From positions 14,260,001 to 14,324,000 of the forward strand of contig OZ004610.1 of NCBI GenBank assembly GCA_963924565.1: a DNA stretch of 64,000 nt. The letters are read 5' to 3'. Each line of letters starts with the position of its first letter. Within the stretch, counting starts at the first letter, position 1. This document shows positions 27,502 through 54,501 of this stretch, piece by piece. Origin of the DNA: Ascidiella aspersa (lineage: Eukaryota). The notes beneath the pieces are model-generated. The model was not told the origin of the DNA. It did no database searches and saw only the letters and a list, made by a program, of their open reading frames with translations. Position numbers and translations under genes: made by a program.

Positions 27502-28614
27502 ATGAGCCTTTTCGAGAGCGGGTCGACATTCTGCGTGATCACTGGCGCAAGTCAGGGCTTGGGAAGATGCTTAAGCGTGAGTCTTGCCTCTCGTCTTCTG
27601 CCAGGCTCCGTCATGGTGCTGGTGGCAAGATCTGGACAAGGTCTCGAGAAGACGCGCCTACTAGCTTTAAGTGAGCGTGAAGCTGACAGCATTGCCGTGT
27701 TTTGTTTCGCCACGGACCTGTCTGAAGTGAAGTCGGCCCAAATTGACGCGATTCTGTCGCACGAGAGCAGCTGTGGTGAACGGCATCGGAACGCGCTGTT
27801 GATCAATAACGCAGGCTCGCTGGGCGACATCGCGACTAAGGCCTCGGCAAACCGAAGTCCAGACGATCTCGATCGCTTCTGGTCCCTGAACCTAACTTCG
27901 ACCCTGGCCTTGACTTCGGCGTTCCTCGCGCGATTTCGTGAATCTTCGGATATGAGGACGACGGTGGTGCAAATCAGTTCGCGGATCAGCGAACGACCGA
28001 CTCCCGGACTCTCGCTTTACTGCGCTGCGAAGGCTGCCCGGCTGATGCTCTTCAAGGTAACTGACAAATGCACATGAATTCTGTAATAGTTGACGGTCGT
28101 TTTATAACACATTACAGTTGGATAAGTGTTGCGATTTAATATGCCGCGCGTTGGCACAATGTGTATATAGTGGCTGTTTGCTATAAAGATGTGCTTATTA
28201 TGCTCAATTTGTTTTTAGTAAGGCGCAGTTTTGCTGATAAGGCTGCAGCCACAGCCTAGAAATGCTTCAGTAATCCGTTTATCGTTTGCCACAAACAAAT
28301 AAACGCCTGGTTGCCGTTAATAATCCAACGACAATCGTTTAAAGGTGCTTGCACTCGAGGAGCCCGAAGCACGTTTTCTCAGCTATGGCCCTGGGCCATC
28401 GAACACAGAAATGTGGAGGCAACTTCAGTCCATCTGCGTGCCCGAGATAAAAGAGATGTTTGCTCAAATGACCGCTAGAGGGCAGGTGAGGGATCCTGAG
28501 GAGCCGGTGCGTCACCTGCTGGACATACTGCAGGCCGACGAGTTTGAATCGGGCGCACACCTACTGATGCCTGATAGGCAGGTAGCGGATGATGAAGGGA
28601 ACGAACCTGTGTAA
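27502..28614 (+). CDS. SPR: Sepiapterin reductase-like SDR, about 274 aa. Exons: 27502-28056, 28345-28614
   Basis: Motifs TGASQGLG (Rossmann fold), LINNAGSLGD, the catalytic S...YCAAK, FK|VLALEEP, SYGPGP and FESGAH match SPR. One phase-0 GT-AG intron (AAG|gtaact ... tttaaag|GTG). Confidence 0.88.
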
Positions 28615-29315: not shown

Positions 29316-29492
29316 TACCTGTGTATCATATTTATTATCATACATATTTTATTGTCCTTTTTACGCCTCAATTTCAATATTATCCATATGTTGGAACCTT
29401 AAGTAATACCTGTGTACCATTTTTATCATACATATTTTATTGTCTTTTTCACGCCTTAATGACAATATTATCCATTTTTGGAACCTCAAGTA
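29316..29492. repeat. Tandem duplication of a ~90-bp unit between SPR and the convergent gene
   Basis: TACCTGTGTA.CAT...TATCATACATATTTTATTGTC...CAATATTATCCAT..TTGGAACCT.AAGTA occurs twice. Confidence 0.8.
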
Positions 29493-30179: not shown

Positions 30180-33100
30180 TTAAAACAAAAGTTTTTGCGC
30201 TGGATTTGTCCGACCGCTTCCGCTCGTCGAATTTACGGCGAACACGGAAAGTTGCGGTGAAGAGTAGCTCAGCGACTTGTTCATGGTGGGAGCGGCCTCG
30301 GAAGAGCTCGCCCGACCCACGTCCGGCTTCGACGGCGATCTCTTCATGGAAGGGCGCCTCTTTGCAAAGGAGAGAAACCTGCGTTTCAGGGTGTTCGACT
30401 TCTGGGGCGACTTAGGTGTGATCGCGCTGCCGCCGCGGCTGTTCTGCTCTACAGACTCCATGACGCGACTTTCGATGTCGTTGGCCCGCTGCGCGCCATC
30501 GCCGTACTGAAACGGCGGCGTGACGTCACTGCTGGGTGGTTGTGAACCGCTCCTGACGTCAAGCATGTTGTGGGCGGGCAGGCTGGAGCGCCGGGGGTCA
30601 CGGCCGCGCGGTGACTTGCGCGAGAACTTGCGCATCAGCGAGTTGGAGCTGCGCTGTCGAGATTGCGCTGACGCCGAGAAGGTGTACTCGGAGGTGGCGT
30701 CCACCGAGCCCACCGGAATACAACTGTGGCCTGCTTGCCGCCTGGGGTCGTGCGAGAGCGAGTATTCGCCCCGACTGCGAAAGCCGTCCTCGTCGAACGA
30801 GCAATTGTTGTTGTTGTTGTTACTGTTGTTGTTGGTTTCGTTGCCGTTGCTTACGCAGATTTGGATCATGGCTTTCTTTTCCTCATGCGAGAGGTTGCGG
30901 GTGCTGTTCGACATCGAGCTGTTGCTGTTGTACACGAAGCGCTTGAGAGCTTTGAATGGACCCTTTTGTTGCCCGGCGGAAGGAAGCTGCAGATAAAAAT
31001 AGAACATCTTTTATAAATGTTAGATTTTTTTATTCTTTTAAATTAGATGCAATAAAGCCTTACAATTTTTAAAGAAATAACAGTTACATTTTTAAGGAAC
31101 TTAGAGATGAAAACATTCAGAATTTCTTTCATAGCGAACAAATAACCTTACGGGCTTACAGTCGCCTAACAAGTACGGCCTGAAACATTTCAACACACCT
31201 TGTCGCTGTTTGCTGAGTTGGTGCTCAGTCGGCTCCAACGCTTCGAGTCGAAGCCACTGCCGTCCGAGTCGGAGTCCCGCGACTTGGGCCGCTCGGTCCT
31301 CCCGTCGTAGGTAAAGTACGTTTCGACGGCGCTTGTGTCGCGACGTGCCCGTAGAGGGTCCAGGGTCGCGTAATCGCCGGCGCCGGACTGGAACGGATCA
31401 GTCAGCTCGCTTTCGCCACCGGAGAGCGGACGCGGAGGAATGGAGGAGGCGCGCTTCGAGGAAGACTTGCTCCGGCGTCCCAGCGTCCCGTAGCTCGTGT
31501 GCCGCTTGTACAGGGAAGCCGACTTCTTCTTGCCTCCCATGCCGCCTCCGCTGCTGCTGATCGACAGGTTCTGTGCAACGTCGTCGCTTGGCTCTGCAGC
31601 CACATGGTCTTCCGCGGGAGTGTGGAGGATTCGCTGGATGCGCTTGCGCGTGTGAAGAATTTTCTGCACGCGAAATTATTGTCGTTGTTTAGCGATATGA
31701 GGAAGTCGCGAGTAATGCTTTAGTTAACTGTGCAACTCTTGCGTGCCTAAGTTAAACTGTTTACGCAGCACAGTTCTTATATATTCATGGGATAGATGAG
31801 AAGAGCATGGATAAAGATACGGTTATAAGGAGAAAATATACTTTAGACTTTCCTATGTTATTCAAAGTCAGTCATTTTATAAGTTCTAGTCTTTAACAGA
31901 GAATTATATTTCGTCACAAAATATGGCATCATCAGTCTCTTTATGCGAATGTATTTCTCTGTTAAAGACTAGAACTTATGAATGACTGACTTTGACTAAG
32001 ACAGAAAAGTTCAATGTATATTTTTCTTCCATTTGAAGCCAATTTATTCATTCACGTGGAAGGGCGAGGAGATGTCATTCAGTTTGCCAATTATAAGAAG
32101 GCTAACATTTTATTGCGACACAGAATAATGTTGGTTCCTAAAAGCCAACTTTCGACCAAACAACTACACAACAGCGCTCAAAAAGGTTACGTCGTAACTC
32201 ACCGCCACGTCCAGGTTGGCGTATTTCGGGTTTGGCTTTTCGTCGCTGCTTTCGACTCCCGAGGACGATAATACCCCGGAAGAAGCGACAGATCCGACTG
32301 ACTCAGAAGATGAGGCGGCCGAAGATCTCTTGGACGAGTTATTCACATCGTGCTCGTCCTTACATTGCTCTTCGATTGACCCTGAGGAAATGATTTTAGG
32401 CAAAATTGAACAAACACTTCTAGCTTGGAGGTTGTAGTAAGACATAGGTATAAGTAGGTATCATTTTGAACGTTTCTAATAACTCTATTATTTTTTAAGA
32501 TCGTCAGGAAATAAAACCAACTTCTGTATGGGCTTTGATATTCTTATTACTTTTAGCTTTGTTTTAAAGTTTTTTTTATCATTATTTCAAACTTGTCTAT
32601 TCATATTACATTCAAATAATCCGTAAGCACAAAAATGTTGCATGCCTATCAGTCGCAAGTGCAACTTACTCAACTAAACACCGCACTCAACTCACCCTGC
32701 ATTTGCCTTTCCAGATCGTCACGTGACCTAGGCGTGGGTGATGTCATGAAGTCCATTACCTCGTCATAGTCGCTGTCGTCGAAGACCGACCTGCGGTGTT
32801 GCCCGCCGATTTGGCACTTTGCCAGGTCGCCAGCCACGTCGACGACATCGCAATCCTTGGGCTTAAGCACGCCGTAACCCTCATCTTCCGAGTCGTTGAT
32901 GGCTTTGCTGTGTTTGGCGTCCAGCGTGCTGTAGGCGCAGGATTCTGCACGAAAAAAGTGTGGGGCTTAATTTGTATAGCGGCTCAGTGTAAATAGGCCT
33001 ATTTGATACGGTCACAGAGTAATGGAACTTATGTAACATAAGAGAAAAATGTTGTTTTTTTCTGTTAAAACGGTTTTGGCGCCTTTACCGCAAGTATGTG

Positions 33101-34797
33101 ATCATTATGTAAAGCGAAACCATTTTGCGAGGGCCTCGTTTATTTTGGCTGTTTGTTCGCGAAAACCTATACGCATACCTGAGGCGGTATTTTCACGTGT
33201 CATTGCGCGTGGGTGTTGCATTGCTTTGTAGTGATTCAATGGTTGAAGTTTGGCACAAACAACCACTTCGGATGCTCAAAATTCGTTTTCGCAAACGCTA
33301 GATATTGGTTGCTTCGTTCGAAAACATTAGCATTTCACAAATGGTATTACTAAAATTATTGCCCATTTTCAAAAGCTGCCATTTGAAAGCTGCTATTTAG
33401 GGATATTACACGCAAACCCACCCACCCAGCAGCAGCTGTTGGTTCCCCTTGGCCGCCAGCGATCGCGCCCGTCCAATTCGCGTGTTTACGAAATCCACAG
33501 CAAGGCGCTGATGCGTTGCCTTGATTGAATTATCCGGGACACGGTCCAACTCTATTAGCGGACCTCAAACAATCGAATTTGTGCTGTTTAGCGACAGGAA
33601 AATCAGGCTGGCCCCTGCTACGCGCTTTTCAGCGGCAACGGTCCTGTCTTTGTGCTTTTTTTATTGAAGAGAGGGCGGTGTCAGGTTCAAGTTTTCAACG
33701 GGAACAAATGTGTTTTCTATAGGAAGCAGTCCACCACCGAAACTGTGTTTCGCCCCATTGACATTCTCACCACAACTTTGTGTTTGGTTGTTGCTGGAAT
33801 AAATACTCGAAAATTAATGTTTTTTAAGCTAAGTTGCCATCGTGTAAAGTTGTGTGATATTTACACAATTACAGGTGGGAAAATTTGCTATTTATTTTGC
33901 TGAACGGACAAAATGGGCACATTGCCCCCTAAACTATTAATAGGTTGCCCAACTAAAATGGTGCAGACTAATACCTATGTAGGCAGTTGTGCAAAGCAAT
34001 GGTAGTGGTTCAAACTCGCGAAAGTGACATTTCCTGTCAGTGATCAGGATTCGAAGCATAAACGCCCTGAAGTATGGCTATATATACGCATGTGAACATC
34101 GCGGAAATTACTAGAGAATGCACATAAACGATCCTAACTTATTTTTTCATCGCATCAAGTGCTTCCCCAAGAAATAAAATTTGATCCCGTCGCTCGCATC
34201 GTGGATGACTATAACAATACGAATATTTATAACCAAACACGACTTGCCAAGAATGACATCACACACAACCCACTCGGCTAGACCGATGAACCTTGGGTGG
34301 GTAAGAGCACATCCCATTTGTGAAATCACTGGGTGCGGCTAACGTATCGTTTATACGTGGAACAACTTTCTATAACGGGGTCTGACAAATTTCACAGTTT
34401 CGATGGGAAGTGGACGATTTTAGACCAGGTAAACAATTACGTAGCCATAGTCGGGCAACGGTTTACTTTTTTGCCCCACAGCACAAAAATGGCGAAAACC
34501 CCTTATTTAATGTTATGAAACTAGGTGAATTTTAAGCCAGACGAACTAAACAAAGCCAACATACCTAGGTCATATGCTTCGTTCGTGACGTCACGATCAA
34601 GCGCATACTGACTGAGGCGCTGATTGATCATGACGTCATCGTTAACGTGATTCCGTCCGGTTTCTTCCAGTTGCAACATTTCTTCCGTCGATGGGGATAT
34701 GTTGCGCTTGTAAGCGGCGTTTATTCCGACTTTAAAACTGGCCGTACGCAAGTGCTTGCAGCGCACCAAATAAGGTCGACTTATTGCAAATTTAAGC
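30180..34797 (-). CDS. Ser/Arg-rich disordered protein region with multiple YxxL/V motifs, about 643 aa. Exons: 34565-34797, 32696-32944, 32203-32381, 31199-31663, 30180-30986. Probable cytoplasmic tail of the upstream 7TM gene and/or a separately initiated adaptor
   Basis: Five GC-rich open exons joined by phase-consistent GT-AG introns (phases 1, 1, 0, 0), ending QKLLF-stop. The first exon starts in phase 2, so it needs an upstream exon. No recognised domain. Confidence 0.78.
30804..30833 (-). repeat. (AAC)n microsatellite encoding poly-Asn (NNNSNNNNN)
   Basis: TTG repeats on the plus strand, within the last exon. Confidence 0.7.
31846..32010. repeat. Long inverted repeat (foldback/MITE-like hairpin) in an intron
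   Basis: TCAAAGTCAGTCATTTTATAAGTTCTAGTCTTTAACAGAGAA (from 31862) pairs almost perfectly with TTCTCTGTTAAAGACTAGAACTTATGAATGACTGACTTTGA (to 31995). The stem extends imperfectly outward. Confidence 0.85.
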
Positions 34798-36681
34798 CTG
34801 AAATGAAAATAAAGTCATGAAATGAGGATAAAACTGCTTTAGTCTTACTTAACTTATAAAAAACTAGCTCGCAGTTTATACATCATAGCCGATTAAACTC
34901 GGACCCACTTAGTAACCACCTTATATGCATAGACTTGGTTATAGCTTTACAATTTATTATCCAGTACGAACACAAACAGTTTTTAACGCAAAACGCTAGC
35001 TTTGTGTTTCGTAACGACTGCACTCGATGCTCAACGCGCGTTGCGCTTGTTAAGGAAATGTCGCGAGAGTCCGACTCAGCAAAATACTGCACTGACGCTG
35101 ATCCGTCATTCGCTTGCCAAGGCGGAAGAGTATGCGACTTAGCGACCTGGGGCCGTGAAAAACAAACGCCCCTGTTACTTAAATTGTTACAAACTGAACA
35201 AATTGGCGTCGGTGTTCCGCAGCGGACCGCGTTAGCAGTTTAATGCATAATTAATGTGGCTGCCTGTGACAAGCAAACCCCTGTTATTCTGTTTTGCTGA
35301 GAAGAGAAAGTCATGGCAATTTAAGACCTATGGGCTGTTTAATACTAAGAAATGATTGTCTTCACTGGAAAGTTATGTAATGCTGGTTAAAGGCTGAAAA
35401 GTCGCACAACCTTTCATGACAAATTAGATGGTGTTTACATGTAAACCAAAAGGCTGTGTATGTAAAACATTTCACACTACACTTTCGTAGCGTCAAACAA
35501 AGCCTTTACGCTGCACTACTTAACGGCATTAATGCTATGCCAAATAAACCTAAACAGTTACTTGAACACAACATAGGCACAATGCACATGTTACACACTC
35601 CCCTTTCGAAAGTGAGACGAAGTGCAGAAAAAGAAGGCGGTTTGGCTTATAGCGGTCAACCAGGTTCACTGAAAAGCCATTGTCACCTATTCGAACACAA
35701 CAAGTTGGTGCAAATCCGTAACGTTCGTTAACTTAATCACCCTCATCCTATTTTGTCTCGTGCCATTGCCTGCGTCACAACGTCATCGTGCGTCAGTCAC
35801 GCGGCTTGCGTAACGCAACTTTTGGCAAATATACGAGAAGCGATCACCCTAAACATTCCGCGAAAAGTTGCGGGGGGAGTCATTGTAATGTCCGTTTCTC
35901 TTTAATTCGATTATAAGAAACTAGAAAACTATAAACAGACGTACAATAGCCCTTGTGACGAACGTCGTTGCGGTTATAAATTATCTTGACTTAAACAAAC
36001 GCTTCTAATAATAACTGCCTTTATGGTATTACGTTCTTAAATTAACACATATTCAAGCAACAGTAATGAGGCCGCAAAGCAAAAGCACAATATGCAAGAC
36101 ATAAGCTCGCCAGGCTGAACCGACATAAACTGGAAATCCAGTGTACGCTCACTTTCCTCATTTTGTCCCTCCTACTCACTTTTAGGTAAACGACACTCAA
36201 ATAAACTCTTTGATAGAACCTACCACTACTAACAAGTGTACTACTAAAACTTGTTCTGTTGCCTTCACCAAGTATTCCGCAGCCGTCTTGTAGCAGGTAT
36301 TGAAACGATACGCAGGGTCCGCGCGTCTGCGGCGAAATGGCGACTGCAAAAGCGCGCTCTCTCGGTGGCCCGGACAATTAAGCTCACGCGGTTACTTCTT
36401 CTCTCAGCGGGCCGACGCACAATAATAGCGGCGTTGAAAAGCGATTTCGGAATGATACGAACGAACTGATCAGCGCTACGTCGCGCGCCGCTCACTTTTA
36501 CAGCGTTATTCAGCTTTCGCGGCGCAGTCTTAAAACAGCTCTCTCGCTTTGCAGTTCCGGGAAATGTTAAAGTGGCAGCGTTTGGCTGAGCGAAACACAG
36601 CAACAAACACCCGTGCTAAAAGCCGATTTATTCGCGGCTTCGCCGAAGCGCGGGCAATTAATCAGCAGATCAGGTACATAC

Positions 36682-36722
36682 CTGCGTGGCGCTAACTCCA
36701 GCCGACCTGCAAGGCTCTGCAT
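36682..36722 (-). CDS. Candidate alternative first coding exon (MQSLAGRLELAPR-R) splicing onto exon 34565-34797
   Basis: GAAACATGC start context and a strong phase-2 donor CAG|gtatgt that matches the phase-2 acceptor at 34797. TATA-like TATAATAAAG about 70 nt upstream. Confidence 0.4.
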
Positions 36723-39700
36723 GTTTCGTGCTTAAAGACCAGCTAACTTGGTCGGATGCAAAGCGCAGATTCGTGACTGTATAAAGCGCCCTTTATTATA
36801 TGCTGAGGTTATAGGTTGGGACATTTAACGACGGCATCATAAAGCCGATATACATTGCAGTCAGCAAAAATTCGCTGGCGAAACTAGTGGATTTCAACAC
36901 CAGCTTAGTAATTAGACAATGCACACTGCCAGGCGAACTTTGCTCGATCACAATTTTAAAATTACCTTAATAGAGATACCTCATAATGTAAATTTGCATA
37001 CTTTCAAATATAACCGCAACAATCAATGTTGTGACACTCGATTATTACGCAATTACCGAACACCAAATTTCGATATAATTATCCAATCACACTAATGCAA
37101 CGGCTGACAGCAACACTTTAAAAAAGTTTATAATCCTGTTTAACGTCCATTTAGCGCTACATTGGTGCGTATCGGGTGTTAAGAAGTTGTGCTCTTTCCA
37201 ACATCGTCGCTCCAGCGGGTTATTTTACATCCGACCGGTCCTTAATCCCCGCAAAGTGACTAAATCGTACCGGTGACGCGGCACTTTGATGAAACAGAGC
37301 TCCCCGCTTAGGCGCGACCATGCGTGACGGTTCACGTGGGATCGTCGCGTAACATCGTCCAGTTTTTTACGGTTTCGGCGCATCGGGAGATTCATATTTC
37401 AAGTCGGACCCTCGTCATCGGTGGAAGCAGCTGAAACAGGCGAAGTGGTGAGTAGGTGCCAGCCAGGGCAAAAATTATCACACGAGCGGCAATGTCGCGC
37501 GACCACAAAGCACACAAGCTTTTCCCAGTTGTCATTGGGATTGTCTCTTGCTCTTTATCCCGGCGCGCTGTGAGAAGATTAAAACTGAGTGGGCGCGTTT
37601 CGGAAGGAAGCAGGGTGTTTACTTCAAAACTCGAGGACCGACCACCGCCTAAGAGATTATACCCGGTGCGGGATACAATGCCAAGAATCAAGGTTGGCGT
37701 TTATTGCCGCGACCGTGGGATTCGGGACTTACGCGTGTCCGGCCTGTAGATTTCGGCCACAAACATCGCTGTGTTTGTGTGCAACGCGCGTTTGATGCGC
37801 GATAGACACAAGAAACCTGTGCTCATAAGTTGCGAAGCGTCGGTTGAGTCACGGACCGGTTTTCCGTAGATTGATCGGCGTGTACAAAACTGAGGGTGGC
37901 TTCCGTTTGACAACTGTAGCTTAAGAATAAACAAGAACAATCAATCACCGATAATATTTACATTTACTTGTGAATGGCGGTTACAAACGCAACAACGTCA
38001 GATTAAACCGATCGCCAGTCGACTCTAAACGCAACAGCTTGATTTGTATTTTATTCCGGTACTGATAAGTAGCATTTGGACGAAAAATAACGACCATGGT
38101 CGGGCGCGGCTTATTATGGGTTGAGCGATGCCGTTTCACGGTCGAATTGACAAGAGGAAACTCCGGTCATTGACATCACGCCAATCGGGAGCTTTTATTT
38201 GCGGCGGGCCGCGCATTATTTCGTCTTGTGCGGGCTGGAATATTGGTCGGTCAGCGGAAGGTGACGCGGTCGCGTGTGACGTTCAACTTTACTGCTATGC
38301 AAGCCGCAAACAGGTGCTTTCCCTTTCCTTGTAAACTGCCAGGTTGTCTTGCGACTGGGCAACAACTTGTGTTAATGAAGCAATATAAACCAAGTCCAAG
38401 AAACTGCGTGAAACAAGATTTATATTTCGTCACATCAATATGACAATGTTTTTTTTGTCTAAGTCTTGGAAAACCGAAACACGAAACAAACCGACAACTG
38501 ATATTGTATTCAAAACAGGCGACTAACATTCAGCTTAAACCGAGTAGCTGTCTGTTAGCGGAGTTCATTCAAAAGTTGAAGCTGGTGTCAAAAGACGGCA
38601 TTCTTCATATGCAAATACCAGCAACCACACACACACACATGCAGGGGTCAGCTTTGAAACCGAAGGGTGGCTTCGAAGGAAGGGAGTCGAAACAGCTATT
38701 GTATCGAATTTCCTTTGCAACGTTCACAGGGCTCTGCGTTTTATTTGCGTTGGCAACCTGAAACGAGCGACGTCACTTCAAAGTACCAATCTGGGAATCT
38801 TTTGGACAGATTTTTTCGGAAAGCCGAAAATAAAGTGATTGACTTCGGGCGAATCGTGATCTTCGAATAACGGCAAGGGGAATTTCATGTCATGTGCATT
38901 AAGTCATGTGATCTATTGTTAGTATTGAACGATTTATACATATAAAGCGACAAATTTGCAGAGGTTTAAAAGGGCACTATATGTTTTTTCCGCTGATCAA
39001 AAAAAAGTAAAAGTAATAACGTATAGGAAAGGTAAAGGCGGATTCCGCTGCTTTCATAGCTTTTAAAGGTGCTTTAATCACCCGTCAACTGTCGGGTGAT
39101 GTCGTTACCCCGGTAAAACTAGCAACCAAACCCGAGCCGTCTGTGTTTCCAACAACAACAAATGCGTTCTGCTTTTCCGTCATCCGAGTCCTCGCGGCCA
39201 TTGTCCCGCATCGCGCTGAAACAGCTGCACCGCGTGTACGCGCCATTGTTCTGGGAGTGTAGGACCCAAACCCTCGGCCGAATGTTTCAGATTCAGCGCG
39301 CCTGGTCGCCGCTGAAACAAGAAGTGAAACTCGAATAATGGCGGCGGGCCGACTCGCTGTGAGTTGATCACAAACGTCAGGCGCGACACCCATTGTAACG
39401 AGTCGAGAGAACCGACGGCCTGTCCGGCGGCGAATTTAAGGCGTCGACAAAATTACTGAAGGCCCGCGTACACCAAAGATACATTCCCACGCGTAACAAG
39501 CGATTTACGGATAAACACAGGTTTAAACCGACGGCCTCTCTTTCCATTTTGCAAACCACTCGAGAGAGGTTTTGCGGAGAAAAGCAGCCTACTTTTCACA
39601 AGATGGCAATCACATTCCTTAACCAATTGTCTTTTAGGTACCAATCGCATTCCTGTTCCAACTGTAATCGCTACACTGATATTGGGAAAGCTCGAAAACG

Positions 39701-42700: not shown

Positions 42701-45700
42701 CTCCACTAAAAGAGCAGTAATAAGCCGACCGGCTATCAGACCGGTTCGAACTGGCTGCGTTTTGGCTCTTCCCCGAACTCCCAATCAAAGATGACGGTCC
42801 GAAGCTGTCCAGTTAAACAAAGTGCACGTTGATCCCCCAATAAAAACAAACAATGCTGAACAATATCTCCTTTAAAACGCCGTACTCATTTGTAAGCAGC
42901 GCGGTGCGTTTCGGCGTCATCCAACCCGCTTAGAAAACGCTAATATCCTATTATTACTAGCCCATGCCCTTTTCGGCAACGACAGTTTGCCAAACATCGT
43001 CCAATGTCCTATGCTACAGACAAGTGGTGAAATTTTATTGTGCTCTGATCCAAACGCGTGTTCTGTCATCTCCAGTGCAAACAGGTTAACGGTAAAAACT
43101 GTTACGGGCAGCGTGGTGAATACATGGCGCACCGTCCCTGATACTCCAGCCATAAAACACACACGCAAACACCATAAAGAGCCGAACCCATAAACGGATT
43201 GCCCGATCTGTTTGATCTGCGTTCGATTTGAGAATGGGCATTTCACGGTTTGTATACTCGGTCGGTGGTGAGCTACAGTCGTAAATAAGGGTGCGACCAC
43301 TGTGTCTTAAACTTGTTCGGTCGACACGCGCCCTAAACGAAACCGTAAGTCGAAATAAACCGCAAAGCAAATTTGTCAACGCTGGTGACAAACTTTTCAC
43401 CGCGCAAATGTGTTCGTGTGCTATTCAATCTCAATCGCCTAAATCAACCACTTGAGACGGGCATTGTGGTAAACCCTTAAGGGCCCATGTCCATCCTATA
43501 GTCGAATATTGGCATTTTTACAATTGAGCAGTAAACTGCAATGGTATATGACGACCACTGGGACGATATTATAGACTCACAAACAACATACATGTGAACT
43601 TGGCTAGTTGTGACGTCAATACATTTACACGACTACGCCCAGTACGTGGATAGGGGAATGACTTTACTATACGCACTAATAATCTTCCATTACTAGACCG
43701 CCACCGCTAACACGTAGTTGCTAATTGAAGTCCACACGAGCCAACTTACTCACGACTTGCTAGTTCCAAATGCTTTAATTGGTTCAAGGTCCACAACTCC
43801 AGATGCGATTTAAAATTGGTCAGTGCTAACTATCTTACATTACTTGTTCAACTGCCTTAATAGAGCCTAAATATGGGTTATATTGCACAGTCGTACGAGA
43901 CGTGCTTTTCAAAATGAATACCATTTCTATAGACCAGTGACGCGCCACGAAAACTTACATGAATGGCCTCTAGACAAGGTTTCTATTTATCATATTCCAT
44001 TTCAGCCATTTAGAGGGAAACCCCGAGGCTCACCATGCACAGTACGCAAGCGTTACATTCAATGGTGTTTTTTTATCATAGCCAGGTATTCAACCAATAT
44101 TAGGTGTAGTCAGCTGAATTACACACGCTACAAAAATACATAAACCTTTATACCACCGTAACCTCTTCTCAAGCTATTGAATTTTTCAACACTCCGAGTG
44201 TGTTTGATCGTTGAACGTTACGAATCTGCTTTCTAATAGCGGTATTCGAACTGGCTGACTAAATAGGACAGCAATAAAACGATACGAGAGATGTAAAGGG
44301 TATATGAGTACAGTATAACAAATCAGTCACCTAATTAGGAATGCAACAAACGCTTTGTTTTATAACCCGATTAATACATTACCCAGCAAAAATCAACACT
44401 AACTATTTTCCTGGAGGATATCGTGTAAGGAAGTATATTTTTAAACGAGTATACTGCTTCTAAACATTTATCTATTTCTATATCGCATTTCGATTCTAAA
44501 TACCGCTTCATCCTTGCTACAATATCCGACACAAGATTCTCAAGTCGGCAAGTGCCCTCAGCGCCACAGCCTTACTATCGACTGGACAATGGACATGTTC
44601 GGCGACTTATTTCCACTTGAGCGACGACAAGTTACCAAGTTGCGACTCATCTCGCTAGCCCTGATAAGCGACGCTGCCGAATGCAGAGACGCGAAGACGA
44701 CGCGCGTAGTTCTCTATTGTTCCATCACAGCGGCGAAGCGACCTACTTCAATCGCTGCAGCGGTCGCCAGCGCCGCCCCTCACTTCTCGCCGCTGCAAGA
44801 TTTAAAACGAGAGTGGGCGAGCAAGTGAGATTTGCAAGAGAATCGAAGAACCGTGCCTCGCCATAGCGCGTATCGCACCAAAAATTTGCCATTTAGATCA
44901 ACGCAAAATAGCTCAATATTTCTCTCTCGATAGGCGATTGCCGATGGGAACGCGGTTTTCCTGTCAAGCGTGCCATTTTCCGACCTAGCCAAGTTGTCTG
45001 GCCTACACGTCCTTGCAGTTGCCAGATGGAGTATGCCGCGATCTGAAAAACTAAAACTTGCAAAACTAAAAGAAAAGGAGGTTAAGGAAACACCATGACA
45101 ATCACTTATTGATTATAAAAAGTTGATTTCATGAAAGACTTATTATAACTAATCTTATATTGTTGTTTGGCGCGTAACTGCAGCTTAACTTTCAAATTTT
45201 ATTAAATTAAAATCAAACCAACACAAGCAGTATATTATTGTTTCTTCTAACTGCACAACTCAAACAATGATACTATGCAATGACGAAACCTTTATCATTT
45301 TTTTCCTAATGTTTTCTAATATTTGATTGCTGATTGATGTCGCCAATTTACCACATAGTCAACAACCTATGTAACAAATGGTTGCCATTTGCCCAGTTAA
45401 AATTCAGAAATTAACTGACCAATAATTTCAGACAAGATTACCTTTATTAAATGAATCCCAACCTAGCAATTACGAATAGTCCATCCTGCTATTAAACACG
45501 ATGATTGCACTTTTATTGCTGTTGTTTTACTTATTGAATACGTGGCAAACTGTTTTCGAGTGCATGTTGTTTACGGGGATGTGCGCTATTACAAATCAGC
45601 TGCGGTAAATAAGTCGTCACTCTTACCTATGCTGCTTGCTATAGTGTAGTAGTCTCTCATCACAACCTGCAATTCGCGTCGTTAATTACACCTTGTCCAA

Positions 45701-48700
45701 GCAAAGGTGCAATCTAACAGCGCCATTTGCACCATTTCAAGTTGTTTCGTTCGTGTTGTGTTGTTTTGGGTACACTAGTTTCCATGTTATGAAATATACC
45801 TGGTAAACCTTAATTATAAAGTTGATTCAACCTTCTTTCAAAATAGTGCACGCACTGAATGACAAGCAAGGTTGACCTGTACTGTAACAATAAGTTAAAC
45901 AATTTAAATAACCTGCCTGTGACATGTCAGCTGAGAACTATAAATCTGTAGTAAAAGGGTATTATACACTCACAATATATCATTTCAAGCCCTGCATTGC
46001 ACGACGTACCAAAATATTGGGCCAAAAAATTCCACAAAGAAAAGAAACCTTATTTTGTTTAACAACCGCTATATGTTTTCCTTAAGTTTTAACGAATGTT
46101 TAAACATTTGTCGAAATCAATTTGAGGCCGGATTTAAATGTAAATTAGAAGTTCTAGGTTTTAAATTAATAAGTTTACCTGCATCGGCCAGAACTCGACA
46201 AAACTACTAGTCTATGAAAAACAACGGTAACGAAGGCAACTTGATTAGCGCCTGTGCTGGCTCTGTAATTCGTTAATTAAAACAAACAACAAATGTCACA
46301 CCTACAAACAAGACAAAAATTAGCAGCACGTTCTTAAGAAGTTACATTATGACAAATGACCCATCTAACACACAAACTCAACCTTGCACTGCTTCGTCGT
46401 AACAAACGTGATTCAGGTGTTGCGAAATATAACGCCGTGAACAACAGAACGCATAAACATACAATGGAACAACACTGAATGGAATTAGACTCAAACAATG
46501 AAAATGTTTTGTAACTGATCAAAAAACACTTGTCAGGTTTCGAATGGTTGTTTACGCAATGTCGCAAATGAACTGAAGTACTGAACAGGTGGCAAACGTG
46601 TTATCCTGAAGACTTAAAAACTATCGTCTTCGTAATTTGTTTTACGTTTTAGTTTCAACTAACCTGTCAGCACTACAATAGTTACCCATGCCGAAAGGTT
46701 TTAACTAAAAATATTTATAAAATAATGAAAGTAAAAAAAGAGTTTGATTTCTAGCGTCTTTTATTATTGCTACATATATTTCAAATAATATTTTGTCGTG
46801 CGTATCTTATGTTTTTGAGTATTTTTAAATCATCTATTACTTGTTTATAGATTTATACCAATTAAACGGTAATGACATGTATACTTTTTTTAAATCTAAC
46901 ATTCCCCAGGATAATATATATATTATTTGAATGCACAGTAGGACCGATAGAAACCCGTGGCCTAATGGATCAACAAAGATCCACCGGAACACAAAGTAAG
47001 GATTAGTGCGGAATTTTTCCATTTAAATCATCGCAAACAGATAAAATTGCCAGTGCGCCTGATAGATCAGCGTTTTCAATCGTTTGGCGTGTCAACTGAG
47101 CCATTTACAGGGGGGCGTGGGTTTTCTTTTCGCGGCTAAGTAACCCTATTCAATCAAGCAGCTTCTCATGGGCGCTCGGTGAAAGAAAAACACGTTGCAT
47201 CGCGCGTCTAAACACTTAGTAGAACTGGCCCTTGTTACGTCACAATCGACATGGATCTAATCAATTGACGGTCAAACAAAGCGACCTCGTAACGTCCAAA
47301 TTCCGAGCGAATGAGGTAATCCTAGCTATCGAGTTGTTATGTGCTGTGATACATGCAGCTTAGTTAACCCCCTATGCTGCTTGGTCAAGCCGATAACTCG
47401 AAAACGGGAAAAACTACCGGATTTTCGCAGCAAAATGACTAAGATTCCGAAATGACGCAATTGTTTAGCTTCCTATTGACGTAGTTTATTTTCGTCGACC
47501 ACAAGATGTGTGATAAATACGCGACGACGTGCGCCAAACACACTTTCATTTTAATTAGGAGTACAATACTTGGATAGAAAACCAATTAAATAATATTTCA
47601 TGCATACAAACTGTGCTTGACTAGAAATAATTCGATAGATTTAGGCAAAATAGTCAGAGTAAAATTTACCAGAAGGATAAACAATACATCAGAGCCAGGG
47701 GACCTTCACTAGGCCTCTGTTGTTTATCGCACCAAACCTGCGCTCTTTTAGTTTTCGGCTGTGTTCCCTTCCAGCATCTACGGGCGAAGTTTACCCGATA
47801 TACATGCAAACGCAGTGTATTGACGATGAATATTTTATGCGGCCGTACGCACGTAAAAGTCAAGTTGGCCGGAGAAAGTCTCTCGTCGCCGGTTGTGAAT
47901 GTAAGAACACACTTTCAAAGTAGAAATTCTGTTCAGAAACGCCCGTGAATTTGCGGTTTTCTTTGTGTCTACTGACACCCCACCTTGGGGCGGAACAGTG
48001 ACGTAACGAAAATTCCTCGCATTACCGATATTGTGTTTTTAGGGAGCCGGCAAGTTATCTACCCTGACTCATCATGTGAGTCGTAAAGCGATAGACGATA
48101 CGTCTGAGAGAATTACAAATTTAGAAAATTGCTTTCCGCATGGTTACGTCATGAATGAAGCAAAAGTGAAAATAAATAACTAGTTTTTAATGTCTAAAGT
48201 CAAAGTTAAGTCATTCCCAACAAAACAACAAAGTTTGTTAAAAAAATAAAAAAGTTTGAACATAGTGCCATTAAGTAAAGTCGTAGACTGAGTACATTTT
48301 AATACTGGGTAAAGCCGTTTACGAAGGAAGTGGTAGAAATAGTTGAAATCCGTATGTTGTACATCAGACTATGAATACATCATTTGAATAGACAATATGG
48401 TTGGCTGAATAAATTAATTTTAAGCCTTTCGAGCCTCTCAAAAACACCTGTAACTATTAAATTCGAAAATATGGAGTATTGAATTCTATAAACCGAAAAA
48501 GTATTTGGATAAAAGAAAAAAACTAACCTTCGAAAGATAGATTTTTGAGGGACAATTTTACAACGAACGTGCCGTCGTGCCTGTAATTTACCTACGAAAG
48601 CAGTCTCGTACCTTCGCCAAGCAATAAATCCAGCAGCGCCGTGCGGCAGTAGAAGCTCGTTAATTGTCCGGGGCCTGGATTTGCACCTTCGGACACAAGT

Positions 48701-51700
48701 CGATGGTGACGTTACAATGACGAATGACCTTTGGCACGGGTCCCGGCTCTCCAGCACACGCCTGTTGCCTCGACAGGTGAATATGATCGTTTTGACTTAA
48801 CGCTGATAAGAACAGTATTCCTGGCTGTAATTCCCCGGGTATTTGAAATCAGTAAGGTCGCTATGGTTGGCAACGTTTTACTGCAGAGGCACCATCTCGT
48901 GTTTCACCGTAACCGATGTGCGCTTTTTGGTATAAGGGGAGCTGGGTTTTTAACAACACAAATAATTAGAAATCCAAATCTATGAAATATGGTGTTAATA
49001 TTGGAGCAAAACTGAATTTTAATGCAGCACGTGGTTTTAATATATCGGCTTAACGTTTCCGGTTGCCATCATTAAAAAAACATTTAAAAATGCAAAGCAC
49101 TATCCGCAGGCCAATATGCTGTATTGTTTGAACACAAAAAATGCAATTTGGCTCGAAAACAACCTTCTAACTTCTCATATTTATGTTAGCTTGCGAAGAA
49201 ATGTTATATATGCTGAAAGGGTACAGCGAAGAAAGTTATTCTGAAACCGGTCAACGCCCTCTGTTACTCAAAGCGACAACGTCTCAGCGGTCTTTAGACT
49301 CGCAATGTGGCGTAGAATTTTTGTGAGTCGGACCACAGATGCAACAATACATTGGATAAGGAGTGGCAATACTAAGCCATTTTCGTCACACACGAATTTA
49401 TTCACGATTTGCGTCAGCAACCGTGAGAGTTCACCGTGACATGGCGTCTGTATAAGGAATATAAGACTTTTGGTTGTTTTAAAGCAGTTTCGATACAACA
49501 CTGGTTGTAAAAAGCGGCAATGTATCAGCCGCGCCCTTGTGCAGTCGCACTCTTGTCGTTTAAGCAAGTTTAAAACGAAATGGTTCTCTGCCAATAGGAG
49601 TTTCGTTTAAAAACCAAAAAGCTGTTTGTATTGCTCATCATTGGTTGCTTTATTGGGTTTTCGTGGGTGACTTTCTCCCGCGTCACGTGCTGTAATAGCC
49701 CAACTGCGCCGGGAAACTCATTAAAGTTAGTTTGGTAACGAGCGGAGCCTCGCGCTTTCTTGACAAAAATAGAATCTCGAATAGCAGGAGCGAGGCCTTG
49801 GACTGGTCATCAAATTGTTTTTATCACGCATTTCAACACGTCAAGGATAAATATCAATAACGGAAATAACAATAAAGCCACTTTTTTCTAATATATTTTA
49901 TTTCATTTTTCGTGGCACATATTGAACAACCCAGGTTGATTTTTTACGCTGATATCAACAGCATGCCACAAAGTTATTAAGGTCGCAAAATGTTCCAGTT
50001 GCTGGATGGAAATAGTTACAATAAAATATACCACGAACTAACAGCCGCTTCACAGAGGATGAAGCTCTTCCGAATCTAGGTTGCACGTGCCCAAACAGCA
50101 CATAGTTGCCGCTGCGAACTCCCAATACTCTTCCGTCTTGACCGACGAACTTTATTAAACTTGCGACCGCGAAAGTCGCTCTGATGCTAAAACAAAGAAG
50201 GCCGGTCAGATCACTCGTGACGTCACGCCGTGCGCGCGCCTATCCCCGTCGAGTCGGGCTTCGTAACAATGCTCGTCGCGTCGCAAACAAAAGCAACAAA
50301 ATTAAAACGCGAGTGCGCAGGCTCAGCGTGATTCGCGACTAGTTTCGCCTGTTAGTCGTCCGTAGAACTCGTTCAGCTGGATTGGCCTGCTGCAAATAAT
50401 GATTAAATGTGCCCCACTTTTTTCGGGGAGGGGATAATGAGGAACCGGCGAGACGCAGTGTATTTGCCGGCCGTTTAAGCTGCGAAAAGCACGCGCGACC
50501 GTGCGCAATGTTGATTCTGCTTGCACATCGTCACTGGTTTGACGGAGTTTTGGCCCAATTAGAAGATCCAGGTGCAAAAATACAGTACATTTAGCATCGA
50601 AATGACTGATATGTTCAATCGCACGTATGGGGTAAGCCGCAAACAGATGACACTTACAAAATAATTGTGGTAGCCATAATACTAGAGTGTTTCAATCGAA
50701 TGCTTATATGAAATATACACCTTTCGTGCGTGTTTTTTTAGGCCGCGATATCATTACCAAATTGTCGGTATCGTAATCGAGTATGCAAAACACCGATAAA
50801 GTCACACTCATTTAGACATGTTAGCATGCGGTTGCTAATAGCTGATCAAATAGCTTGGGCTAAAACATCGTCAATGGCCAAAATAGTACCGGTAAAATCA
50901 ACTTGCTTTTTCGTGAATTAGGTCCAACACTGTTAACAAAGTTATGTGAACGTTAAAATTTTTAGTTGACACGACCGGAAGCAACGCGTTGTGCGATCAT
51001 CCACGATGACTTTTAGCCTGTCCAGCATTGGTTACCGAAATTGCGTGAAGAAAGTTAAACGAGTCGTGTGCAACAGGACAAGTGTGACCTACTTAGAGCA
51101 ACTCCTCAACGACGCTCATTTCAGCAACAACACTCAACTAAGATCGGGCGTTCCGCGAATTCCGACGCGCGGCTAATGTTTATGCTGGCTGGTGACTCCG
51201 AGTTGAAGCGCTTCTGATCCCGGGCACGAATGGCACCTTGGGTTTTTCTTGTTGTCCTGGGTTAAGCCGCTTTATAACATACAAATAATATTATTCGTTC
51301 AGCAACCGCCGGTGATGGTCAAATCGTGCCCGCTCGATTATGTTTTCCACCGCTCTCGTGTCGTGCTGATGAGTTGCTCATTAAGTGCTAAGGCGATTTA
51401 CATCTTTCTTTCGTCATAGCGTGACGCAGGTGTCAATTAAACTGTTGTTTTCTTGCCATTGTAGCGCACTGATTAGTTCAACTCAATAACACCTTTTTTA
51501 ACAATGGAAGTTAACTGTTTCCTGAGTTAAGGACAAAATGCAAAGTAGGCTACATTATAAAAATGCAGTTTATAACGTGCGGTTAACTCGCATCGAGATG
51601 ATATCAGCTTTACCTTGCAGATCTTGCCATATTCCAGTTATATATAGCACATTAATTTGGCCTACATAACTATTTTGGATAGTTACGTACAGGGTGCAAC

Positions 51701-52404
51701 TGGCGGCCACAACAATAATTTGATTATGATGGTTTATATAGTAGTCATTATGGTAAATTCTTGTAGGTCATTGCGTAGAGTTAATAGTGTTTACCGACCT
51801 AACCCCTGATTAACATTAAGAAGTTGGTCTACCGGCGGCGCACCTAACCCGCGTGTCTTTATTTAATGCAAAAAAATTATATATGCAATTGCTTATTTGG
51901 AATATGTGGTTCTACATTTATCAGCTTGCGACTCACTTCGCAAATAAAAATGTTGTGTCACACTTCTACAAAATATGTTGGCTTAAAACAATATTTTGCA
52001 ATTTTTCATACGAAGTCACCAAAGGCAATTTAATAGGTAATGCAGTACCATAATAATAATAATTTTATAAGGTATAGTGTGCGTTAAAGTCTCGTATATC
52101 TATTTTGTAATTTTTTTTATCAAAATTAGAAAGAATTTCGAAGCACATTAGGGTATCTCACGAGAGTCTCACTTTAAGAACCACTATTTTAAATAAAAAT
52201 ACTTTTGGCCTAGTTTCCTTAAAATGCATGGAAAAAGTTGACACTGTTAGGCAACAAAACATTAATTTGGTTAAAATAATATTTATTTTAGTTTGTCTTA
52301 AACTCTTTTTGTTCATTTAAATAAACCTCCGTCTAACCTACCGGACTCGGACAGAACTTCCGCAAGCGATTTTTTTATCGCATATTAAACAATAAAACTA
52401 CGAC

Positions 52405-54501
52405 TTACCGTTTGGAGAGCCACCCTTGTTTGATCCTGCCGCTCGTCTGGCATCTACAGGGTCCGATGGTAAACGGAAGTAGAAAGGGGAACAGAAAAGT
52501 GGAGGCGCAAACACTGAAGATGCAAGAGGGACTGTACCACTGGAGGGACACAGCTGTCCACTTCAGAAGTGCAAGAATGGTGAGTGTGGGTCGTGCAGCG
52601 AGTGCTGTCCACTCTTCCAACGAAATCTACGTGTGGTGTTATCATTAGACTTCAATACGACTCACATGGGAAGTGTTTTATTTTGGATCGTTTTGTGTGA
52701 ATTCAAAATTCGCAAAAGATGTCTGAGGTTCATTTTTTAAAGTACTTGAGCTGCAAATCTTGTTTCAGATGATTACCTATTATAATCATACCCATATAAC
52801 TTAATATGTATAGCACACGCCATGTTTTATCCAATTATTTTGTATTATTTTAGTAACCATTTTGAAGTTAGCAGGACAATAACATTACCAGCACAGGCAG
52901 GCATAACCATAATACATTTACCTTTAAACGTTTTAGTTCGCTTCTTAAATTGAAGAATTCTTGTAATTCCACCAGGAATCCATAGCAACTTGATAACACT
53001 CCAAAAGCAAACGACACCAGGAGCAAATTAGAAGGCCATGTCACCCAACATACAGGCTTGCCAGTTTCCAAATCGTTGGCTTGAAAATTTTCTTCCTTTA
53101 AGTTTTGTGAACTTAATCCTTGACTGGTTGATACAAAAGCTATGCTGTCCATAATTAGATTCTTTGTTCTGAGAAGAGGCATTAGTGCTAACAACGAATC
53201 TGTAGGTCCAGTATTAGCGTGAACTGTTGTCCAATGTGTAGGTGCAGCAGTTGTACTACGTTGGAGAATGGTTTCATTTTCCAAAACGATATCTGGGGTC
53301 ACAAATTCCGATGTTGTCATTTCAGTTGTGTTACTGCGCCCAAGGGCGCCTAATGGAACATTGACACCTTGCATTTGGGACATTGTGTAAACCGATATCA
53401 TCAGTGTAGCGACAACTGGTACAATAAGCACTGCAGATAAACAGAACAGTTAAAAAAACTATTGTTATGATGAATTAATATTACAGTCTACATATGCGAG
53501 TAAAAGTGAATGTTTGACGTATACTTAGTGTCAATAGACACAAATTTTCGCAACTGTTCTAAAGGCTCTTTTTTTAATAGATTTTAATGTTTTGATTTTA
53601 CCTTTACACTTAGCGTTCGATAACTGACATATCGTCTTGGCGTAAATTTAAACGCTACTCGTTGGCAACACCCAGATACCAGATAATTTCTAGCGGTTTA
53701 CGAACATAATTAATGTAGGATCGGAATCCATACTTACAGAAAGAAAATAGAACAAGAATTGAATCATGAACACGTGGAAGCTTGCGTCGTACATTTCTGT
53801 TGCATATTGACGACGTCAGCAGACTCTGTATCTCGAACACCATTATCATCTGAGTATAATTGCAAATAAAACTATAAACACCACAAATATATTGTGAAGT
53901 TTTACACCAAGATGAAAACGTTATTTAAACAAACGTATGACGTAGAATTATACTTTACTCAAATTTGTTTTAAGAACGTCACAAGAGTAACAATTGATAA
54001 ACATTTGATTCTTTAGCGCCACCCACCGTCAGTATGTTTTTGATCATTGCGACGTGTGAAGCATGACGTTGTGAACAAGTGATCACGAAGGTTGCCAAAG
54101 ATATAGTTGATGTAATAAATGAAGCGCACATAAGTATATGCGAATGACGTAACCATTTTATCATGGGTCGAACCTGAAATTTTAAATATCAAACAAACTT
54201 TTTAAATATCAAACAATTAGTGCGACTAGAAATTCATTTTTGTTTCTGTTGTATTGCACTAAAATATTAAAACATTATGCAACTTATGCATCTGTTGAGC
54301 ATTATTAGTAAACATTTTTGAACTTTAAAAAATGTGGTTTTGACAAAGTCGCATTTTGAGAAGTTTTAAGTGTTTTAATTTATTTACCTCGATATTCTGT
54401 CGTTCCTGGGACGGTTTGGACCACATGTAGCATTGCATGCAAACTGCGAACACCGAACATATGGCAGTGCAGGTAAACACTAGCGATCCCAGAAATTCCA
54501 T
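52405..54501 (-). CDS. Divergent seven-transmembrane receptor (class B/adhesion-like 7TM core), about 367 aa. Exons: 54388-54501, 54027-54173, 53738-53849, 52922-53430, 52409-52626 (then either stop at 52405 or splice to 34797)
   Basis: Seven hydrophobic segments with class B-like landmarks: TM2 SHILMCASF, TM3 C...MIMVFE, TM4 LIVP, ECL2 CW, TM6 TLTILALL. All introns are GT-AG and phase-consistent. The family assignment is by eye only. Confidence 0.72.

What the first reader, a model, noticed from the sequence alone, without database searches (positions are those of the whole stretch)
30180..54501. Modular orphan 7TM locus: receptor core plus a ~650-aa phospho-Tyr tail, with signals for three different products
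Seen in the sequence: the last TM exon ends ...WLSK CG|gtaagt (phase 2), which fits the phase-2 acceptor 17.6 kb away at 34797 and gives one ~1010-aa ORF. If unspliced, the same site reads CGG TAA, and an AATAAA follows ~120 nt later (52283-52288), giving a ~367-aa short-tailed receptor. A separate ATG exon (36682-36722) with a TATA-like box also has a phase-2 donor, giving a soluble tail-only protein. Inference: one locus may switch between a short GPCR, a GPCR carrying a Tyr-signalling scaffold, and a free adaptor or decoy. I do not recognise this architecture from any named GPCR family.
Basis: partly seen in the sequence, partly recalled or inferred. Interest (0 to 1): 0.8.

Follow-up and report, generated by a model that had tools for sequence, protein, structure and literature searches.

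The report
Orphan membrane gene beside tyrosine-motif gene
A sea-squirt locus holds a lineage-restricted seven-segment membrane protein gene and, 17.6 kb downstream on the same strand, exons for a disordered tyrosine- and serine-rich protein; the sequence allows them to be spliced into one 1010-residue protein, but nothing shows that they are.

Summary
There are five exons for a 367-codon protein with seven hydrophobic segments and five exons for a 643-codon disordered tail. The phases match across a 17,611-base gap, a TAA lies inside the donor, an AATAAA follows 118 bases later, and there is a 41-base ATG exon.

- The one RNA run gave no read on the membrane half, so no junction was tested.
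- Four-fold GC3 is 0.40 in the membrane exons and 0.71 in tail exons T2-T5.
- The other nine introns are 177-1620 bases.
- The genome is an ascidian's, where unpaired acceptors take a spliced leader. The first ATG after the tail's acceptor is in frame.
- The ATG exon is at chance level.

No Pfam family, solved structure or database relative matches any exon searched, so "GPCR" is not established. Variants in three DNA runs (synonymous changes, an in-frame indel) fit a real, constrained membrane gene.

My odds are about 0.55 for two genes and about 0.3 for the long splice in at least some transcripts. This scan did not find the locus on other DNA.

The parts
54388..54501 (-). E1: start codon and first hydrophobic segment (38 codons). 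AG lies directly before the ATG.
   Evidence: All three DNA runs carry an in-frame +3 nt insertion at 54411.
54027..54173 (-). E2: 49 codons with the second hydrophobic segment and the start of the third.
53738..53849 (-). E3: 37 codons plus 1 base, with the rest of segment 3, a basic loop (NRNVRRKLPRVH) and the start of segment 4.
52922..53430 (-). E4: the rest of segment 4, a loop of about 115 residues rich in Ser/Thr with NTT and NET sequons, the letters CW, and segment 5.
   Evidence: Single copy in the genome. No relatives found. The variant at 53069 is synonymous.
52409..52626 (-). E5: segments 6 and 7 and a basic end (GPCRCQTSGRIKQGWLSK), with two trailing bases CG.
   Evidence: Variants at 52507 and 52570 are both synonymous.
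52403..52408 (-). Donor GTAAGT. Read through, it gives CGG then TAA (52407-52405).
52282..52287 (-). AATAAA 118 nt after that TAA, followed about 22 nt later by TGTTTTGTTG. A candidate poly(A) site for a 367-residue product.
   Evidence: The hexamer occurs 1.5 times per kb on this strand, so this is weak evidence.
34798..52408 (-). Spacer of 17,611 nt: either one very long intron or intergenic DNA. It is unique in the genome at 42% GC, with no Pfam, Rfam or tRNA hit.
36682..36722 (-).
   Evidence: Candidates of this kind occur at chance frequency.
34565..34797 (-). T1: first tail exon, behind the strongest acceptor of the locus.
34677..34679 (-). First ATG downstream of the T1 acceptor. It is in frame, has G at -3, and no ATG in any frame lies in the 118 nt before it. 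Candidate start of a tail-only protein (MLQLEE...).
32696..32944 (-). T2: acidic, with the motifs YSTLD, YGVL and YDEV.
32203..32381 (-). T3: Ser-rich, with NPKYANLD.
31199..31663 (-). T4: 155 codons, basic and Ser-rich, with YATLD and YGTL.
30180..30986 (-). T5: 268 codons plus the stop, Ser/Asn/Arg-rich. The next AATAAA is at 29757.

Best explanation
Most likely these are two neighbouring genes on the same strand of an ascidian genome.

The upstream gene (54501-52409 and probably a little further) encodes a lineage-restricted membrane protein with seven hydrophobic segments. The N-terminus is probably outside and the C-terminus inside. It has a glycosylated Ser/Thr-rich outer loop, no detectable relatives and background-like codon usage. 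Its last recognised exon either reads through into the TAA and the AATAAA 118 nt later, or splices to a short unrecognised 3' exon.

The downstream gene (34797-30180) encodes a roughly 600-640-residue disordered Ser/Arg-rich protein. It carries repeated Y[AS][TN]LD, NPxY and YDEV motifs and has the GC-rich codon usage of the neighbouring genes. Its mRNA begins at the 34797 acceptor, either through spliced-leader trans-splicing with translation from the first AUG at 34679, or through a small 5' exon of its own.

What is shown: the exon chains, phases, single copy and coding constraint on the membrane exons. What is inferred: every transcript end and every junction.

The long 52409>34797 splice stays possible as a minor product when transcription from the upstream gene runs through. 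In ascidians an acceptor that gains an upstream donor is cis-spliced instead of trans-spliced.
For: Codon usage and gene structure:
- Four-fold GC3 is 72/180 = 0.40 in E1-E5 against 206/289 = 0.71 in T2-T5 (Fisher 3e-11). It is 0.62 at four-fold sites in the neighbouring SDR exon, and overall GC3 is 0.60 in the ORF at 11 kb.
- Short introns beside both halves are equally AT-rich, at 0.24-0.36 GC. The difference is therefore exon-specific.
- The nine other introns are 177-1620 nt against 17,611 nt for the gap.

T1 start:
- There is no ATG in the 118 nt after the acceptor, and the first ATG is in frame.
- GC1/2/3 is flat before that ATG (0.44/0.46/0.49) and periodic after it (0.66/0.24/0.55).
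- A codon model trained on T2-T5 scores the first 39 codons like random open intron sequence.

Tunicate genome:
- Earlier notes of this scan describe an ascidian genome with spliced-leader trans-splicing.
- I found a cellulose-synthase hit in the same genome, and the neighbouring gene's best matches are deuterostome proteins.
- In Ciona about half of all genes are SL trans-spliced, at unpaired acceptors only (PMC1488885).

The membrane gene is real:
- The 3 exonic substitutions listed are all third-position and synonymous.
- The only exonic indel is +3 nt at a codon boundary. The seven other indels (1, 1, 2, 2, 2, 5 and 7 nt) lie outside exons.
Against: - A perfect GTAAGT exactly at the end of E5's open frame would be a 1-3% coincidence if E5 were a last exon, so some downstream partner is expected.
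- T1 is the first convincing coding exon downstream, and its phase fits.
- T1's frame is open for 39 codons before the ATG (chance about 0.15).
- NPxY and YxxL-type motifs are typical of cytosolic tails of membrane proteins, and the tail has no membrane anchor of its own.
- No RNA evidence exists for either half.
- The GC3 and intron-length arguments are statistical and were not calibrated on this genome's annotation.
Confidence: 0.55

Rival explanations
1. One gene of ten coding exons. E5 is cis-spliced over a 17.6 kb intron to T1, giving a 1010-residue protein: a seven-segment membrane core with a 643-residue cytosolic tail full of tyrosine and sorting motifs. It is made either constitutively or as one isoform among others.
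For: - The phases fit (CG|G), and the total is 3030 nt, which is 1010 codons, without a stop.
- The donor is a consensus GTAAGT, and the T1 acceptor scores highest in the locus.
- The frame is open from the acceptor onward.
- By my reading of the exon translations, positive charge sits on the predicted inner loops and on the end of E5, so the tail would be cytosolic.
- Yxx[LIV] occurs 6 times against 2.5 expected (p 0.03). Y[AS][TN]LD occurs three times, with NPKY and YDEV as well.
- The spacer is unique sequence with no recognisable gene.
Against: - GC3 is 0.40 against 0.71.
- The intron would be 11 to 100 times longer than the other nine.
- 31 other acceptor-like sites of similar strength lie in between, 11 of them with 30 or more open codons in the right phase.
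- The first 39 codons of T1 look non-coding by composition.
- No RNA read fell on the membrane half (no test).
Confidence: 0.3
2. One reading: one locus switching between three products. These are a short receptor made by intron retention and polyadenylation at 52287, a long receptor-scaffold, and a soluble tail started from the ATG exon at 36722.
For: All three sets of signals exist in the sequence. A T/GT-rich stretch follows the AATAAA.
Against: - ATG exons with a phase-2 donor of this quality occur 0.8-1.9 times per 17.6 kb by chance, and 2 are present.
- AATAAA occurs 1.5 times per kb.
- 'TATAAT' is not a strict TATA box in AT-rich DNA.
- The model needs the long splice as well (see the rival above).
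- No transcript evidence of any kind exists.
Confidence: 0.07
3. The membrane half is not a functional gene. It would be a decaying or never-expressed set of open frames.
For: - 0 RNA reads.
- No relatives.
- Codon usage like the non-coding background.
Against: - There are five exons with canonical borders and consistent phases over 366 codons.
- Seven evenly spaced hydrophobic segments follow the positive-inside pattern.
- Only synonymous exonic substitutions are listed, and the one exonic indel, seen in all three DNA runs, is in frame. Indels outside exons are not multiples of three.
Confidence: 0.06

Closest known systems
Lineage-specific 'Other/Unclassified' GPCRs of ascidians (Ciona repertoire, PMC2396169)
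   Same: An ascidian gene for a seven-segment membrane protein without orthologues elsewhere. Fast-evolving or ascidian-specific receptors are common there.
   Different: Those receptors were found because they match GPCR profiles. No exon here matches any Pfam 7TM family or solved GPCR. There are only three residues before the first segment.
Class B (secretin/adhesion) GPCRs, Pfam PF00002
   Same: Seven segments and a CW pair just before segment 5, where class B receptors have CW in the second outer loop. That placement is from my memory, so it is a lead only.
   Different: There is no PF00002 match and no N-terminal hormone-binding or GAIN domain. By eye I saw none of the other hallmark motifs.
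Transmembrane adaptor proteins and engulfment-receptor tails (LAT/PAG type; Draper/CED-1/MEGF10 type), from general knowledge
   Same: A disordered cytosolic tail carrying several YxxL/YxN motifs, an NPxY and a YDxV. A Cys-x-Cys lies right after the last membrane segment (GPCRC).
   Different: Those proteins are single-pass with the tail in the same exon chain. Here the attachment to a membrane core is unproven and the core would be seven-pass. There is no sequence similarity.
SL trans-spliced genes of Ciona (PMC1488885)
   Same: An exon that starts at a strong acceptor with no obvious upstream exon, a leader free of ATG, and a first AUG in frame.
   Different: The spliced leader at 34797 has not been seen. 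In Ciona operons the two genes abut, whereas here they lie 17.6 kb apart, so this is not an operon of that type.
GPCR fusions with C-terminal signalling modules (for example the GPCR-PIPK proteins of Dictyostelium and oomycetes), from general knowledge
   Same: The idea of a 7TM core carrying a large signalling module on its C-terminus.
   Different: Those carry folded enzymes and are single, verified open reading frames. Here the module is a motif array and the fusion is hypothetical.

Membership tests
Class B GPCR (Pfam 7tm_2, PF00002) | Significant match of the membrane core to the PF00002 profile | tested here: not met
   Exon-by-exon hmmscan found no family at E <= 1 for any of E1-E5.
Class B GPCR (Pfam 7tm_2, PF00002) | Extracellular N-terminal ligand-binding or GAIN/GPS domain | tested here: not met
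   Only M-E-F precedes the first hydrophobic segment, and the frame closes five codons upstream of the ATG.
Class B GPCR (Pfam 7tm_2, PF00002) | Hallmark motifs in the helices and CW in the second outer loop | tested here: inconclusive
   CW is present before segment 5. I did not see the other motifs, but the motif list comes from memory, so this is a lead and not a test.
GPCR superfamily in general | Seven membrane helices, N-terminus out, C-terminus in | tested here: inconclusive
   Seven hydrophobic segments appear in the exon-wise hydropathy scan, two of them across exon borders. Basic residues cluster on the predicted inner loops and the end of E5, and sequons lie on the long outer loop (sequence reading). 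No topology predictor was available.
GPCR superfamily in general | Sequence or fold similarity to any known 7TM receptor | tested here: not met
   Pfam gave none. The PDB gave only a non-significant E5 match to a somatostatin receptor's loop-2/helix-5 region, at E 0.66. E4 has no relatives in 1.84 billion representatives. The fold of the joined core was not predicted (barred step).
SL trans-spliced ascidian gene | Host genome uses spliced-leader trans-splicing | tested here: inconclusive
   Earlier notes of this scan describe SL RNA genes and sea-squirt identity. My own checks found a cellulose-synthase hit in the same genome and deuterostome best hits for the neighbouring gene.
SL trans-spliced ascidian gene | Spliced leader joined to the acceptor in mRNA | not tested
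SL trans-spliced ascidian gene | Acceptor without a paired donor, and a first AUG downstream that opens the long frame | tested here: met
   The first ATG after 34797 is at 34679, in frame, with no ATG in the 118 nt before it. Whether E5's donor pairs with this acceptor is the open question.
Phosphotyrosine/sorting-motif scaffold tail | Several YxxL-type, NPxY or YDxV motifs in a disordered region | tested here: met
   There are 18 Tyr in 641 residues. Yxx[LIV] occurs 6 times against 2.5 in shuffles (p 0.03). Y[AS][TN]LD occurs three times, with NPKY and YDEV as well. S+T is 23-29% in T3-T5 (12-13% in T1-T2), and ILVFMW is 15-27% across the tail exons.
Phosphotyrosine/sorting-motif scaffold tail | Tyrosines are phosphorylated and bind SH2/PTB or adaptor proteins | not testable with these tools
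   Needs experiments.

The most novel reading that the evidence does not exclude
The 34797 acceptor is shared between two fates. Transcripts that start at the upstream gene give the acceptor a partner donor (52409), so it is cis-spliced. That tethers the tyrosine and sorting-motif scaffold to a taxon-restricted seven-pass membrane core. Transcripts that start inside the spacer leave the acceptor unpaired, so it takes the spliced leader and yields a free scaffold from the AUG at 34679. Competition between cis- and SL trans-splicing would then act as a switch between a membrane-bound and a soluble signalling scaffold.
Probability: 0.2. Interest if true: 0.7.

Novelty: new member of a known kind. 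Interest (0 to 1): 0.35.

Why it matters
If the two halves are separate, this is an ordinary pair of taxon-restricted ascidian genes. One is a constrained orphan multi-pass membrane protein, which is useful mainly as an example of how little of tunicate membrane biology is recognisable by homology.

If the long splice is real, it would be an unusual design: a receptor-like core carrying its own phosphotyrosine and endocytosis scaffold. It would also be a concrete case in which the choice between cis-splicing and spliced-leader trans-splicing decides whether a signalling scaffold is membrane-bound.

Either way, a few RNA experiments would settle the question.

Tried and rejected
RNA and reads:
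- The RNA run X4 gave 0 reads on 50001-56000 from 7.8 M records, about 6% of the run.
- No RNA run is indexed as holding the membrane half.

Protein and family searches:
- Pfam found nothing on all ten exons and nothing above a family's curated cut-off on the ten longest spacer ORFs.
- The word-index search with E4 and T5 found nothing. Its length filter excludes proteins of 600-1000 aa.
- The full HMMER search of 1.84 billion representatives with E4 returned only a bacterial repeat protein. That score was summed over 11 repeats and is spurious.
- The PDB search with E4, E5, T4 and T5 found nothing significant. T5 matched only the Asn linkers of MBP fusions.
- A metagenome scan with T5 found none.

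Locus context:
- I tried to reach an annotated copy of the locus through the neighbouring SDR gene. The best hit is only 56% identical, so this species is not annotated in the collection.
- CpG observed/expected, used as a map of transcription units, is uniform at about 1.1-1.3 and uninformative.
- Rfam and tRNA scans of the window found none.
- The bacterial promoter/terminator scan is irrelevant here.

Left out on instruction:
- No search or fold of any joined (spliced) protein model was run. All searches were exon by exon.

Full report
**What is in the sequence**

The locus lies on the minus strand. I rebuilt the exon chain from the raw sequence.

Membrane half:

| Exon | Coordinates |
|---|---|
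| E1 | 54501-54388 |
| E2 | 54173-54027 |
| E3 | 53849-53738 |
| E4 | 53430-52922 |
| E5 | 52626-52409 |

Tail half:

| Exon | Coordinates |
|---|---|
| T1 | 34797-34565 |
| T2 | 32944-32696 |
| T3 | 32381-32203 |
| T4 | 31663-31199 |
| T5 | 30986-30183 (stop at 30182-30180) |

All borders are GT-AG and all phases are consistent. The ten exons total 3030 nt, which is 1010 codons.

Left unspliced, E5 reads CGG TAA and gives 367 codons. A TGTTTTGTTG stretch lies a further 22 nt on.

The 41-nt ATG exon 36722-36682 exists, with two spare bases and the donor GTATGT. A TATAAT lies at 36800-36795.

**The membrane half**

Exon-wise hydropathy shows seven hydrophobic segments. Two of them straddle the E2/E3 and E3/E4 borders.

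By reading the sequence, basic residues concentrate on the first and second predicted inner loops and on the end of E5. The loop of about 115 residues between segments 4 and 5 is Ser/Thr-rich and net acidic, and it has two N-glycosylation sequons. This fits N-terminus out and C-terminus in. Only three residues precede the first segment.

Nothing recognises this protein:
- Pfam gave no family at E <= 1 for any exon.
- The word-index search found no relative of E4.
- The exhaustive HMMER search of 1.84 billion representatives found only a spurious bacterial repeat protein.
- The PDB gave only a non-significant match of E5 to a somatostatin receptor, and in the wrong helix.

E4 and E5 are single-copy in the 308.6 Mb genome. 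'GPCR', and 'class B-like' in particular, is therefore not established.

**Is the membrane half a real gene?**

The three DNA runs laid on 50001-56000 differ from the reference at many places.
- The three exonic substitutions listed (52507, 52570, 53069) are all third-position and synonymous.
- The only exonic indel is a 3-nt insertion at a codon boundary in E1, present in all three runs.
- The seven other indels (1, 1, 2, 2, 2, 5 and 7 nt) all lie outside exons.

That pattern is what coding constraint produces. One caution: only 40 of the 80 substitution differences were printed.

**RNA**

The one available RNA run gave no read at all on these 6 kb, from 7.8 million records covering about 6% of the run. 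The tool itself calls this no test. No indexed RNA run holds the stretch. That was my only read-laying run, so the tail half and the 34797 acceptor were never laid. The junction 52409>34797 is untested.

**The genome is a tunicate's, which changes the reading**

Earlier notes of this scan describe spliced-leader RNA genes and call this a sea-squirt genome. I checked this in part:
- The genome holds a cellulose-synthase match, a tunicate hallmark among animals.
- The neighbouring short-chain dehydrogenase exon has deuterostome sepiapterin reductases as its best matches. The top hit is only 56% identical, so this species is not annotated in the protein collection.

In Ciona about half of all genes receive a spliced leader. 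This happens only at acceptors that have no partner donor upstream, and paired acceptors are cis-spliced (PMC1488885). An exon that starts at a strong acceptor with no visible upstream exon is therefore ordinary in this animal. It does not by itself call for a partner 17.6 kb away.

**Evidence bearing on one gene or two**

For one gene:
- The phase matches, which has a 1 in 3 chance.
- GTAAGT sits exactly where E5's frame closes. I estimate that as a 1-3% coincidence for a true last exon.
- T1's acceptor scores highest in the locus.
- T1's frame is open for 39 codons before its first ATG (chance 0.15).
- The tail carries motifs typical of cytosolic tails of membrane proteins. Yxx[LIV] occurs 6 times against 2.5 expected (p 0.03), Y[AS][TN]LD occurs three times, and there is an NPKY and a YDEV. 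The tail has no hydrophobic anchor of its own.

For two genes:
- Four-fold GC3 is 0.40 in E1-E5, 0.58 in T1 and 0.71 in T2-T5 (Fisher 3e-11). The SDR exon is at 0.62 at four-fold sites, and the ORF at 11 kb has an overall GC3 of 0.60. The short introns beside both halves are equally AT-rich. The tail exons therefore share the codon bias of neighbouring genes and the membrane exons do not.
- The gap is 17,611 nt, while the other nine introns are 177-1620 nt.
- Thirty-one other acceptor-like sites of similar strength lie in the gap. Eleven have 30 or more open codons in the fitting phase.
- In T1, the 118 nt after the acceptor hold no ATG in any frame, and the first ATG (34679, G at -3) is in frame.
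- Codon-position composition is flat before that ATG and periodic after it. A codon model trained on T2-T5 rates the first 39 codons like random open intron sequence.

The spacer is unique in the genome and has no Pfam, Rfam or tRNA hit. That fits either reading.

**The three-product model**

AATAAA occurs 1.5 times per kb on this strand. These two signals carry little weight on their own. The short product (read-through plus poly(A)) remains plausible, and it is also what a stand-alone membrane gene would make.

**Verdict**

- About 0.55: two neighbouring genes.
- About 0.3: the long splice exists in at least some transcripts.
- About 0.07 (a subset of that 0.3): the full three-way switch.
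- About 0.06: the membrane half is not functional.

The most interesting reading still open is that cis-splicing and spliced-leader trans-splicing compete for the 34797 acceptor. That competition would decide whether the scaffold is tethered to the membrane core or free. I put it at about 0.2.

By class this is a new, lineage-restricted member of known kinds of genes. Ascidians are known for many fast-evolving, unclassifiable receptors (PMC2396169). Interest is modest until RNA evidence exists. The tests are simple: read the letters upstream of 34797 in RNA reads, or run RT-PCR from E5 into T1.

**Limits**

- There is no RNA evidence for either half.
- There are no comparative genomes.
- The likelihood figures for intron length and GC3 heterogeneity are my estimates and were not calibrated on this genome.

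Noticed in passing
window 31833-32024 (intron between T3 and T4): A palindromic element of about 190 nt with arms of about 78 nt. As RNA it folds at -88 kcal/mol (z -14). The genome search returned 88 matches on nine contigs (both orientations counted) from 602 first-look candidates. This is a MITE-like repeat family.
   Followed up: partly
window 27502-28077 (+): An open exon of 191 codons for a short-chain dehydrogenase (Pfam adh_short, 4.7e-19). Its best matches are deuterostome sepiapterin reductases at 36-42% identity, plus one transcript-derived protein at 56%. It converges tail to tail with the tail gene.
   Followed up: partly
window 11013-11987 (-): A 324-codon open frame in a GC-rich island (GC 0.52, GC3 0.60) with no Pfam match. 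Probably a coding exon of an unrecognised gene.
   Followed up: partly
window 54411 and 52699: All three DNA runs carry +CTT at 54411, which adds one Lys codon in the first inner loop of the membrane protein. They also carry a 37-nt insertion at 52699 in the E4-E5 intron (X3 shows only its first 22 letters, as a loose end). The reference individual is the odd one out.
   Followed up: no
window 54502-54530: The membrane gene's ATG is directly preceded by ...TTTTAAAG. This is an acceptor-like AG that could itself be a spliced-leader site. TATAAAA sits only about 16 nt upstream of the ATG, too close to serve it as a TATA box.
   Followed up: no
window 29316-29492: Two tandem copies of an 88-nt unit (86% matches), about 690 nt downstream of the tail gene's stop.
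   Followed up: no
G000:C5:19610700-19611167 (L005): A cellulose-synthase-like match (PF03552, 27.5 bits) inside a 647-codon open frame. This fits the tunicate cellulose synthase gene.
   Followed up: no
window 34798-52408: 17.6 kb of unique, repeat-free sequence at 42% GC, well above the 24-36% of the short introns. It has no coding or RNA-family signal and may be regulatory DNA.
   Followed up: partly
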